64,000 nucleotides of DNA from Guillardia theta CCMP2712 (Eukaryota > Protista > Cryptophyta), in assembly GCF_000315625.1 (NCBI RefSeq), contig NW_005434656.1:355741-419740 (forward strand), written 5' to 3'. Each line of letters begins with the position of its first letter. Position 1 is the first letter of the stretch. The translations under genes were made by a program, and so were the position numbers. The notes below the pieces were generated by a model, which ran no database searches, was not told where the DNA came from, and saw only the letters and a program-made list of their open reading frames with translations. This document shows positions 1-8,700 of the stretch, one piece after another.

Positions 1-313
1 AAGCAAGAATCGAGCAAGAGGGTTTGACGATTCTCGTAGATCACCCTTGTCAACGCTGTACATGATGAGACCCCGTGAACGCCCTCTCCTCACGGACAAA
101 GTCATCGCAGCTACTCGCCAGTGCGACGTCTGTTCCTATACGTGTTTCATATCTTTACAACCTCTGTTATTCTATGTGTTTCATATCTTTACAATCTCCC
201 TAGTTTGCCTGTGACGTCTGTCGGCCGTTACTCATACCGCATCCACTTGGTCTCTCACGCAGCCGCTGTCTCTCTCGTCGCGCTCCTCTCAGTCGACCTC
301 CTCCCTCGTCCCT

Positions 314-2713
314 TCAGCCGTCGCTCGTCACGTCCAGCTTGCTCCTCCCCGTCCTCTGCCTCGCGGCTGATCGCTCGGCGATCAGCGATGGGAGGGGGTC
401 GAGCCGGCGCTTCTGCGTCTGCTCATGGCAGCGAGCGGTCAGGGTCTCCTCGCGCGCGCAGCCTGTCGACCTCTTGGGGCAGCGGCTGCATCGGCATCGG
501 TACCGAGGCTCTCTCGAAGACGATCCGGTAGGCGGGATACGCGCTGGCGCTGTGCTGGAGGAGGCGTGAGGGGGTGGAGGGGCTGCCGGGAGGGGGGAGG
601 GATGGGAGGTACCGGGATGACGAAGATGGAGGGGTCGTGGAGGGTATCGACCATGCTGTGAAAGTGCTGCCCGGGGCTGCCTGCTCGCGTGACACGTGAG
701 AAAGAAGCCAAGACGGGTACAGGAGGTGCACAACCAGGAGGAGGAGGAGGCAGGGGCAGGGGTAGAGGAAGGGGCAGGGGTACAAGGCAGGAATACGGGC
801 AGGGGCCGGGCGCAAGGCTGCCGTACCGGTCGGGTCGACCGGGGGCACAGCACACCAGGAGTGTCCTTGCGCGTATCGTCCCAGCACAACCTGCCACCAG
901 CCGCATCGCTCAGCCCCCCGTCCGCGAGACGTCAGAGGGCTTGACGCACGCGCGCTAGCAGCATGGAGCAGGGCTGATTGGCTCTCGTGTAGCCGCAGTA
1001 GGACAGCGAGTACCTGCGATGGCACGAGCCTCTCACTCCCTCGGTGTTCGCGTCTCGGACTCGGTCGCCTCCTCTTGCTCACCTCGCGTCTCTCGCAAAG
1101 TAGGAGCCTGCCCCGTACACCCTCCCGTTGCTTGAGCCTGCTCGCGGGGCGTGAGAGGACGCATGGCTGCTCGCTGCCGGTGTGCCTGAGAGGGTGACCA
1201 TGAAGCCCTCGCTCATGATGGCGGACTCAGCGTCCTTGTTCTCCCTGCAGCCCCTCGGGCGTCACGCAGCTCGTCTTGTCGGCCCCTCCTCGCCCTCACC
1301 TGGTCCCGTCTCGAGGCTGTACCCCGTGAAAGCCCCAGCGCTCCATGGAGGCGGCACTCCACGCCAGCCCTCGTCTCTCCACGTCGCTGCGCATGCGATC
1401 TCTCTGATGCGCCTGGTCAGTGCCGTCGCCGACAGCTCGCGGGCCCACCTGCGCTTGGTAGAGGCGGCGGAGACCGGAGTTGCGCACGCGGCTGATGCTG
1501 GCGATCCTGAATCTGCGACACGTCGTCGCTGTCAGTCGCTGGTCCGCCCTCGGCGGGCCCTGAGGCCGGGCGTACAGGTACTGGGAGACAGTGGCGTGGA
1601 AGAGGTCGGACACCATCTGGTATTCCTCGCTCTCCCCCGCGAGCTCCTCCGTCAGCTGCTCCTCGTCGCTGAGCTGCGTCAGCCGCGCTGCGGAGAGACG
1701 AGACGGGAGCCTACCTGTCCGACTTCCACAGCCTTCGCGGGTCCCCACAAGCACCCAAGCCCAGCAGAGTCACTCGCGTGCCTTACAGGCCTCTCGCGCT
1801 CTCGCGGCGTCTCTTCCTCCTCGCTCACCAGGGATGTCCGGTCACCGGCGTCTCGCCATCGTACTCAACCTCGTGAGCCCGGCCGTCGAAGGTCTGCAGG
1901 GTGCCGGAGAGAGGCATGTCCTTGGCAAAGCTGCCTTGGAAGATACGGCAGACGTGCTCGCTCTCGTCCAGACACTCGTACACTCCCTGCCAACGTCCCC
2001 ACTCGTCACGCGTCCTCGAGCCCCTTCCTCCTTGCCTCCTCCCGTCACCTCGCCGTCCATCATGTCTTCCCTCCAGCTCCCGCTGTACTGCCAGCTTCGC
2101 GCTCTGTAGAGTCCTTGACCTGAGCGACGCTCGTCACGGCTGGGCGTCGCGGCCTGACGGGGAGCGGCTCCCTCACCATGGCGCTGATCGTGGACGTAGT
2201 CGCCCTCGTAGGAGGAGCCGTCGGGCCAGCGGTAGGTTCCGTGACCATGCCGCTGGCTGCCGCTGATCCCTCCTGCCGCGTCTCTCCGTCAGGTCGCGCT
2301 GCCAGCACGTGCTCACGGGGGTCACCGTGATAGCTCGACCCGTCCGGCCATATCGCTGTCCCTACGCCTTCCATCACCCCGTCGGTGAACCGTCCCGTCA
2401 TCCTGCGGGGAGGTCAGCCTTGGCCTTGGAGGCAGCCTCGCCGTGTCGCTCGCTTGCTCGACGACTCACGTCAGTCCCGACGGGAAGTACATGCTCCCCT
2501 CTCCTGTGAAGGGTCGCTCCCCTTGCTCCCCCTCCCAGCATCTCCCGTCTGGCCAGATTTGCCTGCGCAGGCGGCATGAGGCATGGGGCATGAGGGGAGG
2601 AGGATGGCGTGCCTGACGCGAGCGTGGGGGAGCTTCTCGGAGAAGACGAAGGAAGGAGAGAGGAGGAGCTCGAGGTTGTCAACGTTGACTGCTGTCGTAT
2701 CCACAACCAACAT
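314..2713 (-). CDS. Inverted copy of the MORN-PARP gene, lacking exon 1 (starts at internal Met MLVVDT)
   Basis: Mirror of 3118-5512. No frameshift or stop was found in the exons and the 5-bp indel is intronic. An in-frame TGA lies upstream of ATG 2713. It may be a truncated functional copy or a pseudogene. Confidence 0.7.
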
Positions 2714-2898
2714 TCGCTGCCACAGGTGACGGCAAAGTTCCTTATGGAGGGGTTTCCGATCATATCAGTACCGGTGGTTTGAGAGTGATCATGACGGGTA
2801 GCACGATCTGTTTGTGGGATGCTCCCATCAGTTCACCACCCCCTGTTACACACTCGATTTAACCGGTACTTGCCCCTCACCCGCAAAAGCCTTCATAA

Positions 2899-5512
2899 AT
2901 GCCCCTACCCGATTTCATGCCACATCGAAACCAAAGGTGAACCCCCACTACCTCCTCCCCTCCCCCTCCCCCTCCCCCTCCCCCTTTCCCCTGCATCTCT
3001 TCCTCATCTTGTGAGCGACCTGCCTCTTCCCCTTCCCTTCTCAGATCTCGTTGTTCCATAGCAACTTCTCCCCGTCATGAACCCGCTGACTTTCATGATG
3101 AGAGTGTACGTCAGCGAATGTTGGTTGTGGATACGACAGCAGTCAACGTTGACAACCTCGAGCTCCTCCTCTCTCCTTCCTTCGTCTTCTCCGAGAAGCT
3201 CCCCCACGCTCGCGTCAGGCACGCCATCCTCCTCCCCTCATGCCCCATGCCTCATGCCGCCTGCGCAGGCAAATCTGGCCAGACGGGAGATGCTGGGAGG
3301 GGGAGCAAGGGGAGCGACCCTTCACAGGAGAGGGGAGCATGTACTTCCCGTCGGGACTGACGTGAGTCGTCGAGCAAGCGAGCGACACGGCGAGGCTGCC
3401 TCCAAGGCCAAGGCTGACCTCCCCGCAGGATGACGGGACGGTTCACCGACGGGGTGATGGAAGGCGTAGGGACGGCGATATGGCCGGACGGGTCGAGCTA
3501 TCACGGTGACCCCCATGAGCATGTGCTGGCAGCGCGACCTGACGGAGAGACGCGGCAGGAGGGATCAGCGGCAGCCAGCGGCATGGTCACGGAACCTACC
3601 GCTGGCCCGACGGCTCCTCCTACGAGGGCGACTACGTCCACGATCAGCGCCATGGTGAGGGAGCCGCTCCCCGTCAGGCCGCGACCCCCAGCCGTGACGA
3701 GCGTCGCTCAGGTCAAGGACTCTACAGAGCGCGAAGCTGGCAGTACAGCGGGAGCTGGAGGGAAGACATGATGGACGGCGAGGTGACGGGAGGAGGAAAG
3801 GAGGAAGGGGCTCGAGGACGCGTGACGAGTGGGGGTGTTGGCAGGGAGTGTACGAGTGTCTGGACGAGAGCGAGCACGTCTGCCGTATCTTCCAAGGCAG
3901 CTTTGCCAAGGACATGCCTCTCTCCGGCACCCTGCAGACCTCCGACGGCCGGGCTCTCGAGGTTGAGTACGATGGCGAGACGCCGGTGACCGGACATCCC
4001 TGGTGAGCGAGGAGGAAGAGACGCCGCGAGAGTGCGAGAGGCCTGTAAGGCACGCGAGTGACTCTGCTGGGCTTGGGTGCTTGTGGGGACCCGCGAAGGC
4101 TGTGGAAGTCGGACAGGTAGGCTCCCGTCTCGTCTCTCCGCAGCTGACGCAGCTCAGCGACGAGGAGCAGCTGACGGAGGAGCTCGCGGGGGAGAGCGAG
4201 GAATACCAGATGGTGTCCGACCTCTTCCACGCCACTGTCTCCCAGTACCTGTACGCCCGGCCTCAGGGCCCGCCGAGGGCGGACCAGCGACTGACAGCGA
4301 CGACGTGTCGCAGATTCAGGATCGCCAGCATCAGCCGCGTGCGCAACTCCGGTCTCCGCCGCCTCTACCAAGCGCAGGTGGGCCCGCGAGCTGTCGGCGA
4401 CGGCTCTGACCAGGCGCATCAGAGAGATCGCATGCGCAGCGACGTGGAGAGACGAGGGCTGGCGTGGAGTGCCGCCTCCATGGAGCGCTGGGGCTTTCAC
4501 GGGGTACAGCCTCGAGACGGGACCAGGTGAGGGCGAGGAGGGGCCGACAAGACGAGCTGCGTGACGCCCGAGGGGCTGCAGGGAGAACAAGGACGCTGAG
4601 TCCGCCATCATGAGCGAGGGCTTCATGGTCACCCTCTCAGGCACACCGGCAGCGAGCAGCCATACGTCCTCTCACGCCCCGCGAGCAGGCTCAAGCAACG
4701 GGAGGGTGTACGGGGCAGGCTCCTACTTTGCGAGAGACGCGAGGTGAGCAAGAGGAGGCGACTGAGTCCGAGACGCGAACACCGAGGGAGTGAGAGGCTC
4801 GTGCCATCGCAGGTACTCGCTGTCCTACTGCGGCTACACGAGAGCCAATCAGCCCTGCTCCATGCTGCTAGCGCGCGTGCGTCAAGCCCTCTGACGTCTC
4901 GCGGACGGGGGGCTGAGCGATGCGGCTGGTGGCAGGTTGTGCTGGGACGATACGCGCAAGGACACTCCTGGTGTGCTGTGCCCCCGGTCGACCCGACCGG
5001 TACGGCAGCCTTGCGCCAGGCCCCTGCCCGTATTCCTGCCTTGTACCCCTGCCCCTTCCTCTACCCCTGCCCCTGCCTCCTCCTCCTCCTGGTTGTGCAC
5101 CTCCTGTACCCGTCTTGGCTTCTTTCTCACGTGTCACGCGAGCAGGCAGCCCCGGGCAGCACTTTCACAGCATGGTCGATACCCTCCACGACCCCTCCAT
5201 CTTCGTCATCCCGGTACCTCCCCTCCCTCCCCCCTCCCGGCAGCCCCTCCACCCCCTCACGCCTCCTCCAGCACAGCGCCAGCGCGTATCCCGCCTACCG
5301 GATCGTCTTCGAGAGAGCCTCGGTACCGATGCCGATGCAGCCGCTGCCCCGAGAGGTCGAGAGGCTGCGCGCGCGAGGAGACCCTGACCGCTCGCTGCCA
5401 TGAGCAGACGCAGAAGCGCCGGCTCGACCCCCTCCCATCGCTGATCGCCGAGCGATCAGCCGCGAGGCAGAGGACGGGGAGGAGCAAGCTGGACGTGACG
5501 AGCGACGGCTGA
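2899..5512 (+). CDS. MORN-repeat protein with C-terminal PARP-type (mono-)ADP-ribosyltransferase domain, full-length copy, multi-exon
   Basis: Spliced reading gives MORN-like units (IWPDGRCWEG, GVGTAIWPDGSSYHG, HGHGTYRWPDGSSYEGDY, GQGLYRARSWQYSGSWREDMMDGEG). These are followed by PARP motifs EYQMVSDLF, SISRVRN, ERWGFHG, GRVYGAGSYFARDARYS, VVLGRY, HSMVDTLHDPSIFVI and AYPAYRIVF. Exon 1 (ATG 2899-2936) lies in the spacer. Confidence 0.85.
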
Positions 5513-5629
5513 AGGGACGAGGGAGGAGGTCGACTGAGAGGAGCGCGACGAGAGAGACAGCGGCTGCGTGAGAGACCAAGTGGATGCGGTATGAGTAACG
5601 GCCGACAGACGTCACGGGCAAACTAGGGA

Positions 5630-5731
5630 GATTGTAAAGATATGAAACACATAGAATAACAGAGGTTATAAAGATATGAAACACGTATAGGAACAGAGGT
5701 TGTAAAGAAATGAAACACGTATAGGAACAGA
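5630..5731. repeat. 34-bp AT-rich tandem repeat (3 units in right arm; 2 units at ~130-195 in left arm)
   Basis: Unit ~CTGTTCCTATACGTGTTTCATATCTTTACAACCT. Copy number differs between the arms. Confidence 0.85.
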
Positions 5732-5794
5732 CGTCGCACTGGCGAGCAGCTGCGATGACTTTGTCCGTGAGGAGAGGGCGTTCACGGGGTCTCA

Positions 5795-8700
5795 TCATGT
5801 ACAGCGTTGACAAGGGTGATCTACGAGAATCGTCAAACCCTCTCGTCTGATGCTCGTTCCTTCACACATCTTTCCTTTCTGTGTCCTTTCTTCTCTCCCT
5901 TCCTCCTTGTCAGCCCTTTCATCCTCTTGTTCTAGCTTGCCTCTTTCCCGTTTTTTCGTCACCTCGTTGTTCCAGTCCTCTTCCTATCCATCTCAAAGCA
6001 CTAGTCCTCTGCCCCTCTTCTCTCTGCTCCTCCTCTCCTCTCCTCCCTACCTGATGGATCGAGCTCCTCCTTCGTTCATCATTGCAGAGCACCTCTACTA
6101 CAACCACGCTGGAGCTCGGCCGTCTCTGAGCAAGAGGACATCAGGGCCAGCAGACGGTAGACATCAACACGAACCTCTCGGAGGTTTTCTGACGAGTTTT
6201 CTTCCACACCGACTTTTCTCCTGCTTGAGAACCAGGAGATTCCTTTCTTGGCTTCCTTCTCGTTCTCGCCGCCTTCCTTCTTCGTCTTTCCCTCCTTGTC
6301 ATTCTTCTTCTTGTCCTCCTCCTCGTCGTCCTCCACCTGAAGGTCCTGCACCTGATCTGTGACCGCCTGTTCTTGTGATAGCTTGCTCAACAAGCCCTGC
6401 AAGAGATGTCGCCTCAGTCGAGGGACAGGATCGACTTTAGACTCACTGTGATAAGTTTCATGGCAGAGGCCACTTGCCCGACGAGACTGGAGATGAGCAT
6501 CGGGACGAGAGAGAGGAGCGAGAGGGCGAGGAACGACTTGTCAAGGGAAGGTTGAGATAGAAGTCCTTGTGTGTAGGAGCAGATCACGGCTGCGATTCCC
6601 AATCTTGCCATGCTCGCCTTCAGGGACACGCGCGTCAGTGACAGGGAGAGAGCAATAGGGGAGATGAAGCAAAGAGAGAGGGAGAGAAGGAGAGAGGGCG
6701 AGGAGAGAGGGAGGGAAGAGAGGGAGGGGATGGATTGATGGAGTGAGTGAGTGAGTGAGTGAGTGAGTGAGTGAGTGAGTGAGTGAGTGAGTGAGTGAGT
6801 GAGTGAGTGAGTGAGTGAGTGAGTGAGTGAGTGAGTGAGTGAGTGAGTGAGTGAGTGAGTGAGTGAGTGAGTGAGGGAGGGAGGGAGAACGAGAGAGAGG
6901 GAGGGAGGGAGGGACTTGAGAGGGAGGGACGGAGGAGTTCAGGAGCGGAACCTCGAGCTGCTTGATGAACTCGAACCAGTCGTCTTGAGGATGGAGCAGG
7001 AGGATGATCAACAGCTCGATGGTGTAGACGGTGATACACAGGGCTGAGTTGAGATGCCCGTTGGAGGCGAAGCCAATGATGAGGCCGATGATCAGCTTGG
7101 TCCCGATGCCGAACAAGCCGAACCACCAGGCTCGGCCATGGTTGCCCTCTATGAGGACCCCGTACCTGTCCATGAACCTCTCGTGCAGTATGCTCCTCTC
7201 CTCCCTCACTTCCGCCACCTTCCACGACCCTCGCATCCTCAGCTGGTTCAGGGAGCTCGTGAAGCTCTGACCCTTGCCCAGCACGCCCTTGCCCTCCGGG
7301 TTCCTCAAGGTGACGAGGAAGGTCTGGAGGTTCTCGCGGAAGGAGACGTCCTTCCATGCTACCGTCTGCTTCTTCACTCCCTCGAACGAGATGAACACAA
7401 AGAAGGCAAAGGCGCCGAGGAGGAAGAGGAAGAGGAAGCTGCCTGCTATCTGATACTCGGCGCACCTGCTCGCCATGGCGCTGGAGGCAGCGAGTGAGAG
7501 ACCCTGGAACTGGGCGACGAAGACAGTGAGCTCCCACTTAGGGAAGGGGATGGGAGTTTCTTTCATGTCCTTCCCGTCCAGCCTCTTCTTGTACTTGATC
7601 GCCTCCACGACGAGCGACCGGACAGCCACGACGACCAAGGAGACCAGGAAACACATGAGGACTGTGGAGAAGAATTCGTAGGGCGAGTTGTGTGCTACCA
7701 GGCAGTCGGCAGCACCTCGTCGGGCTGGGAGGGAGGAGTTGTGCGAGTAGAAGGCGAAGAGCTTGAAGTTGGACCAGGACAAGCCGTCTGAAAGCGCCTT
7801 CACCCCATCCGACTGATCCCTTCCTCCGATCCCACCGGCCAGCGCGACGAACTGAGTCTGGAAGATGAGGCTCATGACTGCCGCGCCCGACGCTCCTCCC
7901 CCGCCGGTGCCTGCGGAGCCGGAGGAGGCCATGGAGGAGGAGACGGCGCCTCCTACACTCGCCCCAACACTGTTGGCAACTGCCGTGGCCACGATGACGG
8001 CGACCGCAGCAGTGACAACCTTGCTGGCTGTCTGCATGCTCTGCTTGATATCCTTGAGAACAACCTGTTCGGACAGACACTGCATCTTGTCCTCCAGTGA
8101 GGATTTGGTGTAGCCATCCATGCACTCGCACATCGCGATGGAGCTGCTGAGAGCTGGAGAGCTGGAGAAGGCAGGGCATCGAGTGCAGAGAGAGTCAGTG
8201 ACGTTAACGAAGGCGTCAGAGACGGAGCCAGCAGGGCAGGAGGAGCATACGAACTGTTCTACCTCCATCTTCTTGCTCGTCAGGTTCCTTAGGATACCCT
8301 CAGTGTCCGAGTAAGAGCCCTCACCGCAGGAGACGCAGGATGGGCACTTTGGGAGGAGGGACCGCCGGTCCTGAAGGCTCCCAGTCAATACTTCCCCCTC
8401 CTTGAGAGGGGGCTCGCACTGGAGGGGGTTGCTGGTCATGGAGACGTAGTGCATCTTGAGGTCTTTTAGGGTGGATCCGTCCATGCAGGTGAGACTGTTC
8501 TGGTCGAGGTAGAGGTACTTGAGGTTGGTCATGTTCTTGAAGAGAGCCGGGGGGACCATGGAGATGGAGTTGTGCTGCAGGGACATCATGAGCACGTTGT
8601 AGAGCTTGTCGAAGCACCCCTCGCCGAAGGATGCGATCTTGTTGTCCATGAGCTCGACGATTTGCAAGGAGCTGGCGGTGTCGAACAATCCCTTCTGCAA

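What the first reader, a model, noticed from the sequence alone, without database searches (positions are those of the whole stretch)
2899..5512. MORN-repeat + PARP-like mono-ADP-ribosyltransferase fusion hidden by short introns
Seen: splicing joins about 5-6 MORN-like repeats to a complete PARP catalytic domain that the ORF track does not show. The triad reads H (WGFHG), Y (GSYFA) and I (DPSIFVI). Known: Ile/Leu replacing the PARP1 catalytic Glu marks mono-ARTs of the PARP7/11/12/14 type, which usually carry WWE, macro or CCCH domains and often act in antiviral or stress responses. MORN repeats mediate membrane or cytoskeletal protein interactions. Inference: a membrane- or cytoskeleton-targeted mono-ART with an architecture I do not recognise from characterised PARPs.
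Basis: partly seen in the sequence, partly recalled or inferred. Interest (0 to 1): 0.8.

Follow-up and report, generated by a model that had tools for sequence, protein, structure and literature searches.

The report
MORN-PARP mono-ART gene, inverted pair
This is a real, spliced and transcribed gene, apparently of the cryptophyte alga Guillardia theta, that joins five to six MORN repeats to a PARP10/12-like domain lacking the chain-building glutamate, so it probably adds single ADP-ribose units; it is an unannotated, recently duplicated member of a small uncharacterised family.

Summary
Spliced RNA contigs from two studies confirm 15 of the 16 introns. One 653-nt contig runs from the MORN exons into the PARP exons, past the His motif, so the fusion is a single transcript. 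The gene has 17 exons (3118-5512, + strand) and encodes 457 aa. These comprise five MORN units spaced 23 residues apart plus one or two degenerate ones, an 18-nt micro-exon, and a PARP domain with H283 (WGFHG), Y324 (GSYFA) and I391 (PSIFVI).

A family profile matches only solved PARP10, 12, 15, 13 and 14 domains (E 6e-16 to 4e-11); tankyrases score E>1. I391 falls in the PARP10 Ile987 column.

The coding start is 3118 by homology or 3240 by RNA, and the mRNA 5' end remains unexplained.

The gene lies in a 99% identical inverted duplication. A second intact copy sits at 314-2713 on the minus strand.

Full-length relatives with the same architecture are already public but uncharacterised: Guillardia theta GUITHDRAFT_140954 (50% identity, same exon sizes) and a Hanusia phi protein. 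No protein prediction for this locus turned up.

Mono-ADP-ribosyltransferase activity and MORN-based targeting are inferred, not shown.

The parts
3118..5512 (+). Copy B of the MORN-PARP gene: coding region of 17 exons, 457 aa. Exons: 3118-3218, 3269-3361, 3429-3505, 3559-3654, 3712-3782, 3845-4002, 4099-4116, 4158-4250, 4314-4377, 4423-4526, 4582-4640, 4689-4743, 4813-4876, 4936-4999, 5146-5213, 5272-5355, 5408-5512.
   Evidence: Introns 2-16 are seen in RNA contigs. The model was translated. Its exon sizes 93, 77, 96, 71, 158, 18, 93, 64, 59 and 68 are identical to those of the G. theta paralogue gene in L081.
3118..3218 (+). Exon 1, inferred from homology only. It starts at ATG 3118 and ends in phase 2.
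   Evidence: Its translation extends the BLASTP alignment to residue 7 of P0002 and residue 5 of P0003. The intron phase and position match intron 1 of the P0002 gene. No RNA contig covers it.
3219..3268 (+). Predicted intron 1, GC..AG, 50 nt. Its last 47 nt (3222-3268) are present in RNA contigs and contain the alternative start ATG at 3240.
   Evidence: The donor CAG|GCACGC resembles the RNA-confirmed GC donor of intron 11. The sequence resembles the 3' part of intron 1 of the P0002 gene. RNA contigs read through 3222-3268 and then leave the window.
3269..4002 (+). Exons 2-6, the MORN array (residues about 38-197). Five units are spaced 22-23 residues apart, followed by one or two degenerate units.
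   Evidence: Pfam MORN passes its cut-off on exons 3 and 4. The region is conserved in P0002, P0003 and P0049.
4099..4116 (+). 18-nt micro-exon (part of W-LWKSD-S) that links the MORN and PARP halves.
   Evidence: An X8 contig has 14 extra letters between 4003 and 4155 that match this stretch (table 5c). An 18-nt exon sits at the same place in the P0002 gene. LWKS/LWMS is conserved.
4158..5355 (+). Exons 8-16, the PARP-type catalytic domain (residues about 215-412).
   Evidence: Family profile A2 matches PARP10, 12, 15, 13 and 14 chains at E 6e-16 to 4e-11. The Atlas model of the paralogue reaches TM 0.70-0.74 to PARP12/10/14 clusters.
4498..4500 (+). His283 codon (CAC) in WGFHG.
   Evidence: It aligns with the FHG of PARP12.
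4724..4726 (+). Tyr324 codon (TAC) in GSYFARDA.
   Evidence: It aligns with PARP10 Y919 and the YFARDA of PARP12.
5199..5201 (+). Ile391 codon (ATC) in DPSIFVI. This is the position of the PARP1 catalytic Glu and of PARP10 Ile987.
   Evidence: The column was assigned from the PARP10 alignment.
4641..4688 (+). Intron 11, GC..AG, 48 nt. If retained, it would add 16 low-complexity residues.
   Evidence: An X9 contig skips 48 nt here. The homologues lack these residues. The P0002 gene has an intron after a 59-nt exon at the same place.
5408..5512 (+). Last exon, encoding the basic C-terminal tail that ends in LDVTSDG, followed by the stop codon.
   Evidence: The joint 5355/5408 is seen in X8 and X9. 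The tail aligns with the P0002 tail, which ends in VIDLTGD.
314..2713 (-). Copy A: the mirror-image second copy. All 17 exons are intact, and it differs from copy B by three residues (S179F, L184H, R422Q).
2720..3111 (.). 392-nt spacer between the two arms.
   Evidence: RNA depth is zero here, and a DNA contig covers only 2720-2944.
3112..5843 (.). Arm B of the inverted duplication. Arm A is 17-2719.
   Evidence: There are 4 substitutions in 1374 exon bases against 13 substitutions plus a 5-nt indel in 1021 intron bases (Fisher p 0.006).

Best explanation
The stretch holds a nuclear, intron-rich, transcribed gene. Its product of about 457 aa carries an N-terminal array of five to six MORN repeats, joined through an 18-nt micro-exon to a C-terminal ADP-ribosyltransferase domain of the PARP10/12/14/15 type.

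The NAD+ pocket residues are present: His283-Gly284, Tyr324, Ser332 and Tyr335. The chain-elongating glutamate is replaced by Ile391. The most likely activity is therefore transfer of single ADP-ribose units from NAD+ to itself and to bound substrates, as in PARP10. This is inferred.

The MORN array most likely acts as a protein-binding or dimerising module that positions the enzyme or brings two catalytic domains together. This is also inferred.

Shown here: the splicing, the single transcript, the domain identities, the triad, the two intact inverted copies and the existence of cryptophyte relatives with the same architecture.

Not shown here: enzyme activity, substrates, cellular location and the 5' end of the mRNA.
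For: - RNA contigs confirm 15 introns, and one contig bridges the MORN and PARP exons.
- Pfam MORN passes its cut-off on window exons.
- The spliced protein is 50% identical over 465 columns to P0002 (E 8e-156) and 46% identical to P0003.
- P0002 passes the Pfam PARP cut-off (35.1 bits against 26.7) and the MORN cut-off.
- The family profile hits only PARP10, 12, 15, 13 and 14 in the PDB (E 6e-16 to 4e-11), and tankyrases score E>1.
- H, Y and I fall in the triad columns, and the YFARDA..YS..Y motif is nearly identical to that of PARP12.
- The Atlas model of the paralogue's domain reaches TM 0.70-0.74 to PARP12/10/14-like clusters.
- Exons of the two copies differ 4.4 times less than introns (p 0.006), and both reading frames are intact.
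- PARP10 and PARP14, with Ile or Leu at the third position, are mono-transferases (PMC2964712).
- MORN repeats are dimerisation and protein-interaction modules (PMC7725318).
- PARP15 needs dimerisation of its transferase domain for activity (abstract of PMC12572374).
Against: - There is no biochemical evidence.
- My two AlphaFold runs on the paralogue failed (pLDDT 36.6 and 32.9), so there is no usable structure model of my own.
- The window's own spliced protein could not be put through Pfam as one piece. Single PARP exons score below the cut-off (best E 0.16).
- The Hanusia relative has Tyr in place of the His (LFY), so not every family member need be active.
- A 10-12 residue insertion follows FHG.
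- Three of the four exon differences between the copies change the protein.
- The 5' end of the mRNA does not fit the window.
- RNA depth is low (contig depth 2-7; 0.7 or less in the raw-read run).
Confidence: 0.65

Rival explanations
1. The protein is a catalytically dead PARP-like scaffold, as PARP13/ZAP or PARP9 are. Its PARP fold binds a ligand or partner and transfers nothing.
For: ZAP, an inactive H-Y-V protein, is among the significant PDB matches. The Hanusia relative lacks the His, and P0049 appears to have Asn at the third position. The loop after FHG is long and of low complexity.
Against: The window protein and the G. theta paralogue both keep H, G, Y, S, Y and Ile, and the YFARDA motif is identical to that of active PARP12.
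Confidence: 0.2
2. Both copies in the window are silent or decaying duplicates. The RNA comes from a third copy elsewhere in the genome whose first exon differs.
For: RNA contigs leave the window sequence at 3221|3222 without an AG and continue for at least 255 letters that occur nowhere in the 64 kb. The last 22 of those letters begin with GT. Together with 3222-3268 they would make a canonical 69-nt intron 1 behind a different exon 1. No RNA covers exon 1 of the window. The window's intron 1 has a GC donor.
Against: RNA contigs carry the copy-B base at all four exon sites where the two copies differ (3474, 3942, 3957, 5351). Both window copies keep 17 open exons. Exons are more conserved than introns. 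DNA contig depth (about 192 on the arms against 116-125 on the flanks) fits two copies rather than three.
Confidence: 0.25
3. The inverted duplication is an assembly fold-back artefact, and only one gene copy exists.
For: The arms are 99% identical and head to head, only 392 nt apart. No DNA contig of X5 covers 2985-3101 or the junction at 3111/3112.
Against: In X5 the arm end at 5843 forks into two different flanks, one being the window's 5844 onward and the other matching the window's first bases. One contig crosses the 2719/2720 junction. Arm depth is about 1.6 times flank depth. The arms differ at 21 substitution sites and 2 indels, and both variants are seen in public data: RNA carries B-type bases and the X5 contig carries A-type bases.
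Confidence: 0.1

Closest known systems
Guillardia theta GUITHDRAFT_140954 (P0002; UniRef automatic name 'Poly [ADP-ribose] polymerase'; JH993014.1) and Hanusia phi A0A7S0HKU0 (P0003)
   Same: They share the domain order (MORN array, LWKS linker, H-Y-I/V PARP domain, basic tail) and are 50% and 46% identical over the full length. The P0002 gene has the same exon sizes, including the 18-nt micro-exon.
   Different: At only about 50% identity this is a distinct paralogue, not the same gene. P0002 has a longer tail with a basic cluster and a terminal VIDLT motif. Neither protein has been studied. The public P0002 model seems to keep parts of two introns inside the PARP domain.
Human PARP10 (ARTD10) and PARP12 catalytic domains (PDB 5lx6, 2pqf)
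   Same: These are the best solved-structure matches (E about 6e-16). They share the H-Y-I triad, the PSIFVI motif with the Pro two residues before the Ile, and the YFARDA motif. PARP10 is a proven mono-transferase (PMC2964712).
   Different: The accessory domains differ: PARP10 has RRM, Gly-rich and UIM elements, and PARP12 has CCCH and WWE, whereas this protein has MORN repeats. This protein has a longer loop after FHG. Whether it belongs to the same clade by descent or by convergence was not tested.
MORN-repeat proteins (TbMORN1, junctophilins) and MORN-enzyme fusions
   Same: The units are 23 residues long with a GxG register. Fusions of MORN arrays to enzyme or signalling domains are common: protein kinase, peptidase C13, TIR and F-box fusions all appeared.
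   Different: None of the MORN fusions seen in those searches carries a PARP domain. The partner of this MORN array is unknown.

Membership tests
PARP catalytic domain (Pfam PF00644) | Profile match above the curated cut-off | tested here: inconclusive
   The window's spliced protein could not be submitted as one piece. Single exons give at best E 0.16 and 11.9 bits. The full-length paralogue P0002 (50% identical, E 8e-156) scores 35.1 bits against a cut-off of 26.7. Family profile A2 hits PARP10/12/15/13/14 chains at E 6e-16 to 4e-11.
PARP catalytic domain (Pfam PF00644) | His and Tyr of the H-Y-E signature in the NAD+ pocket | tested here: met
   H283 (WGFHG) and Y324 (GSYFA) fall in the columns of the PARP12 FHG and PARP10 Y919.
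PARP catalytic domain (Pfam PF00644) | ART fold | tested here: inconclusive
   My AlphaFold models of the paralogue were too poor to search (pLDDT 36.6 and 32.9). The ESM Atlas's own model of P0002 residues 205-450 reaches TM 0.70-0.74 to PARP12, PARP10-like and PARP14-like clusters.
Clade 3 / PARP10-12-14-15-type mono-ADP-ribosyltransferases (Citarelli et al. 2010, PMC2964712) | Aliphatic residue in place of the catalytic Glu, with a conserved Pro just before it | tested here: met
   Ile391 in DPSIFVI aligns with PARP10 Ile987 in QPSIFVI.
Clade 3 / PARP10-12-14-15-type mono-ADP-ribosyltransferases (Citarelli et al. 2010, PMC2964712) | Groups with clade 3 in a phylogeny of catalytic domains | not tested
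   Only similarity ranking is available: PARP10/12/15/13/14 are significant, tankyrases score E>1, and PARP1-3 and PARP16 are not listed. The paper itself warns that protist members may group by convergence.
Clade 3 / PARP10-12-14-15-type mono-ADP-ribosyltransferases (Citarelli et al. 2010, PMC2964712) | Accessory domains of the animal subclades (macro, WWE, CCCH, RRM/UIM) | tested here: not met
   Pfam finds only MORN and PARP in P0002 and P0003.
Clade 3 / PARP10-12-14-15-type mono-ADP-ribosyltransferases (Citarelli et al. 2010, PMC2964712) | Mono- rather than poly-ADP-ribosylation activity | not testable with these tools
   This needs an NAD+ auto-modification assay.
MORN repeat (Pfam PF02493) | Profile match above the cut-off and tandem units of about 23 residues | tested here: met
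   Exon 3 scores 24.3 bits and exon 4 scores 34.3 bits with two stretches, against a cut-off of 22.5. GxG anchors lie at residues 54, 77, 100, 123 and 145.
MORN repeat (Pfam PF02493) | Membrane or lipid binding | not testable with these tools
   This is not a settled property of the repeat (PMC7725318).

The most novel reading that the evidence does not exclude
The MORN-PARP genes form a cryptophyte-specific, actively duplicating family of conflict or stress-response enzymes, comparable to the fast-evolving antiviral PARPs of animals. In this reading the MORN array recognises a foreign or damaged target and, by dimerising, switches on the mono-ADP-ribosyltransferase. It would also mean that PARP10/12-like enzymes are much older or more widespread than the animal-Amoebozoa distribution described in 2010.
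Probability: 0.12. Interest if true: 0.7.

Novelty: new variant of a known kind. Interest (0 to 1): 0.42.

Why it matters
PARP-family mono-ADP-ribosyltransferases have been studied almost only in animals, where their accessory domains (macro, WWE, zinc fingers) define what they act on.

This gene shows a PARP10/12-like domain combined with a MORN array, a pairing I found in no paper. It occurs in a lineage (cryptophytes) outside the clade-3 distribution reported in the 2010 survey (PMC2964712).

It gives a compact 457-aa protein in which to test two questions. First, does a repeat-driven dimer or partner contact control a mono-transferase? Second, are such enzymes ancestral to eukaryotes or convergent?

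It also documents an unannotated, RNA-supported gene with an 18-nt micro-exon and GC-AG introns, and it suggests corrections to the public model of its paralogue.

The practical importance is modest: it is one more PARP architecture, and its function has not been tested.

Tried and rejected
- My first hand-made model used an exon at 4050-4116 and a 27-nt intron. RNA contigs show the 18-nt micro-exon 4099-4116 and the acceptor at 4157/4158 instead, so I rejected it.
- I first kept 4641-4688 as coding. An RNA contig and the homologues show it is an intron, so I rejected that too.
- Pfam, the PDB and the Atlas searched with the unspliced 122-aa piece gave nothing useful.
- The exhaustive representative search with that piece gave only three hits, but two of them were the key homologues.
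- A word search restricted to the PARP part of P0002 added one metagenome fragment, P0049.
- A word search with window:4006-4530 found nothing, so no fragmentary prediction of this locus in the 96-306 aa range turned up.
- The metagenome scan with full-length alignment A1 was swamped by MORN-only proteins, many of them bacterial. No locus reached the PARP part, so the loci were not used further. Those labelled human-gut metagenome are microbial contigs, and I left them alone.
- The viral-contig scan with the PARP alignment found no relative.
- The 25-letter upstream RNA sequence was found neither in the window nor in the metagenome contigs, and a findings look-up gave nothing.
- Two AlphaFold runs (full-length P0002, then its PARP part, three-row alignments) gave pLDDT 36.6 and 32.9. 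No fold search was run on them.
Full report
**What is in the sequence.** The stretch is GC-rich (about 63%) and has no long ORF on the + strand. Reading it with short introns gives a continuous protein. The repeat search showed at once that the gene sits in an inverted duplication: arms 17-2719 and 3112-5843 are 99% complementary, with 392 nt between them. The gene therefore exists twice, head to head.

**Splicing is real and MORN and PARP are on one RNA.** I laid four public runs on window:2400-5900. Two runs kept as contigs (X8 and X9, from different studies) carry spliced forms.
- The skipped stretches are 3362-3428, 3506-3558, 3655-3711, 3783-3844, 4251-4313, 4378-4422, 4527-4581, 4744-4812, 4877-4935, 5000-5145, 5214-5271 and 5356-5407. 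All are GT..AG.
- X9 also skips 48 nt which, after allowing for the stated ambiguity, is a GC..AG intron at 4641-4688.
- Between 4003 and 4155 the X8 contig has 14 extra letters. These are the core of an 18-nt micro-exon (4099-4116), flanked by GT..AG introns 4003-4098 and 4117-4157.
- That same 653-nt contig runs from 3558 (third MORN unit) to about 4624 (past WGFHG). This refutes the idea of separate MORN and PARP transcripts.
- Overlapping contigs tile the mRNA from 3318 to 5556.
- The raw-read RNA run (X18) looks like a 3'-tag library. It shows only a few reads at the 3' end of this gene, so expression in that sample is low.

**Gene model.** The gene has 17 exons and encodes 457 aa. Introns are 41-146 nt long, with a mean of 64.
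- Exon 1 (3118-3218) and intron 1 (3219-3268, GC..AG) rest on homology only.
- The translated exon extends the alignment to the N-termini of both homologues.
- The intron has the same phase and position as intron 1 of the paralogue gene, and its 3' part resembles that intron.
- Its donor, CAG|GCACGC, is nearly the same as the RNA-proven GC donor of intron 11, CAG|GCACAC.

**Domains.**
- *MORN.* Pfam MORN passes its cut-off on exons 3 and 4 taken alone. GxG anchors at residues 54, 77, 100, 123 and 145 give five units at 22-23-residue spacing, followed by one or two degenerate units.
- *PARP.* Single PARP exons are too short for Pfam (best E 0.16), and the tools would not take a spliced protein by reference. 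I therefore argued through relatives.

**Relatives.**
- An exhaustive search with the open piece 4159-4524 found P0002 and P0003.
- In the sandbox, the spliced window protein aligns over its full length with P0002 (50% identity, E 8e-156) and P0003 (46%, E 1.5e-129).
- P0002 is Guillardia theta GUITHDRAFT_140954 and P0003 is a Hanusia phi protein.
- P0002 passes the Pfam cut-offs for MORN (66 bits) and PARP (35.1 against 26.7).
- A profile of the PARP parts of P0002, P0003 and the metagenome fragment P0049 hits only PARP10, PARP12, PARP15, ZAP/PARP13 and PARP14 among all PDB sequences (E 6e-16 to 4e-11). The next PARPs are tankyrases at E>1.
- The ESM Atlas's own model of P0002 residues 205-450 matches PARP12, PARP10-like and PARP14-like clusters at TM 0.70-0.74.

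**Triad.** In the printed alignments the family column under PARP10 Ile987 (QPSIFVI) is the Ile of DPSIFVI. The Tyr of GSYFARDA lies under PARP10 Y919 and the YFARDA of PARP12. The His of WGFHG lies under the FHG of PARP12. In the window these are H283 (4498-4500), Y324 (4724-4726) and I391 (5199-5201). Gly284, Ser332 and Tyr335 are also present. By established knowledge of PARP1 (G863, S904, Y907), these residues hold the nicotinamide.

**What it probably does.**
- PARP10 (Ile) and PARP14 (Leu) are mono-ADP-ribosyltransferases, and the loss of the Glu prevents chain elongation (PMC2964712). An intact pocket with Ile391 therefore points to mono-ADP-ribosylation.
- For the MORN array, the usual membrane-binding label is weak. 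MORN1 proteins did not bind membranes and form tail-to-tail dimers (PMC7725318).
- The PARP15 transferase domain needs dimerisation for activity (abstract of PMC12572374).
- My preferred mechanism is that the MORN array binds a partner and/or dimerises, and in that way places or activates the transferase. All of this is inference.

**The 5' end is unexplained.** RNA contigs in both runs read from exon 2 leftwards through 3268-3222 and then continue for at least 255 letters that are nowhere in the window. The break at 3221|3222 has no AG, so it is not a canonical splice.
- With that 5' end, an in-frame TAG lies 21 nt upstream of 3222 and the first ATG is at 3240 (MPHASC...).
- The last 22 unknown letters start with GT. 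Together with 3222-3268 they would form a normal 69-nt intron 1 behind a different exon 1.
- These contigs may therefore come from an intron-retaining RNA of another copy, or from a strain whose copy differs upstream.
- They cover only about 3222-3335, so they are not physically tied to the rest of the mRNA.

**The two copies.**
- Both keep all 17 exons open. They differ by three residues.
- Exons carry 4 substitutions in 1374 nt. Introns carry 13 plus a 5-nt indel in 1021 nt (Fisher p 0.006). This fits selection on both copies, although three of the four exon changes alter the protein.
- RNA contigs have the copy-B base at all four diagnostic exon sites.
- In DNA run X5 the arm end forks into two flanks, and one contig crosses the 2719/2720 junction. 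Two copies therefore exist in an independent data set. The 3111/3112 junction is not covered.
On my model both arms contain the same exon 1, whose ATG lies 6 nt inside the arm, so I do not support truncation.

**Organism and annotation.** Earlier notes of this scan name the genome as Guillardia theta. I did not verify this independently. It does fit the run labels sharing one species label, and it fits a paralogue with identical exon sizes in the G. theta assembly. Another note, s1-430782, describes a MORN-PARP gene with an NLS and a SUMO-interaction motif on another piece of the genome. This fits P0002, whose tail ends in a basic cluster followed by VIDLTGD. Neither word search returned a protein predicted from this window's locus (candidate lengths 284-905 aa and 96-306 aa), so the gene appears to be unannotated.

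**Novelty.** The components are well known, and PARP domains are found with many different partners. The MORN partner appears in no paper I could find and in none of the large Atlas clusters near either half of the protein. The same architecture is already public as two automatically named cryptophyte proteins. I rate it a new variant of a known kind, of moderate interest.

**Limits.** There is no usable structure of my own and no phylogeny. There was no Pfam run on the spliced window protein and no biochemical test.

Noticed in passing
window 17-2719 and 3112-5843: This is a 2.7-kb inverted duplication, 99% identical, with a 392-nt spacer. The outer breakpoint at 5843 lies inside the last intron of the convergent neighbour gene. 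Arm A therefore carries an orphan copy of that gene's terminal exon and poly(A) site (about 17-210).
   Followed up: partly
window 5617-6082, minus strand: A convergent neighbour gene lies here. Its poly(A) site is at 5617 (T-runs in raw reads). Its last exon runs to 5822 and is spliced across 5823-6052 to an exon that starts at 6053. It is far more highly expressed than the PARP gene in run X18 (depth about 100 against 0.7 or less). The 3' ends of the two genes nearly touch.
   Followed up: partly
window 5630-5745 (and 120-200 on arm A): A tandem unit of about 34 nt lies in the shared 3' region. There are three units in arm B and two in arm A (34-nt indel at 5676-5709).
   Followed up: no
window 3219-3268 and 4641-4688: The gene has two GC..AG introns with nearly the same donor (CAG|GCACGC and CAG|GCACAC). 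The second is confirmed by RNA.
   Followed up: partly
L081:7787-7848 and L081:7916-7976 (G. theta JH993014.1): The public model of GUITHDRAFT_140954 uses introns of 24 and 34 nt. It thereby keeps 12 and 9 extra residues inside the PARP domain. Canonical GT..AG introns of 62 and 61 nt would remove them and match the window gene and the Hanusia protein. This probably explains why Pfam matches only the first half of the domain in P0002.
   Followed up: partly
P0003 (Hanusia phi), residues about 285-290: The Hanusia relative reads LFY where the others read FHG, so it lacks the triad His. It also has Val at the third triad position. This is either a pseudo-enzyme or a variant worth checking.
   Followed up: no
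window 5489-5509 (C-terminus LDVTSDG); P0002 C-terminus VIDLTGD: Both paralogues share a conserved motif at the extreme C-terminus. In P0002 it matches the VIDLT core known from PIAS SUMO-interaction motifs (from memory). In the window protein it is weaker.
   Followed up: no
window 2945-2998 and 6733-6880: There is a CCCTC-rich low-complexity run in the spacer, where DNA contigs break and the reads tool skipped. There is also a long (GAGT)n microsatellite downstream.
   Followed up: no
runs X7, X13, X15, X16: Freshwater and lake-water metagenome runs hold 5-39% of the sampled words of this stretch. This is odd if the organism is the marine Guillardia theta.
   Followed up: no
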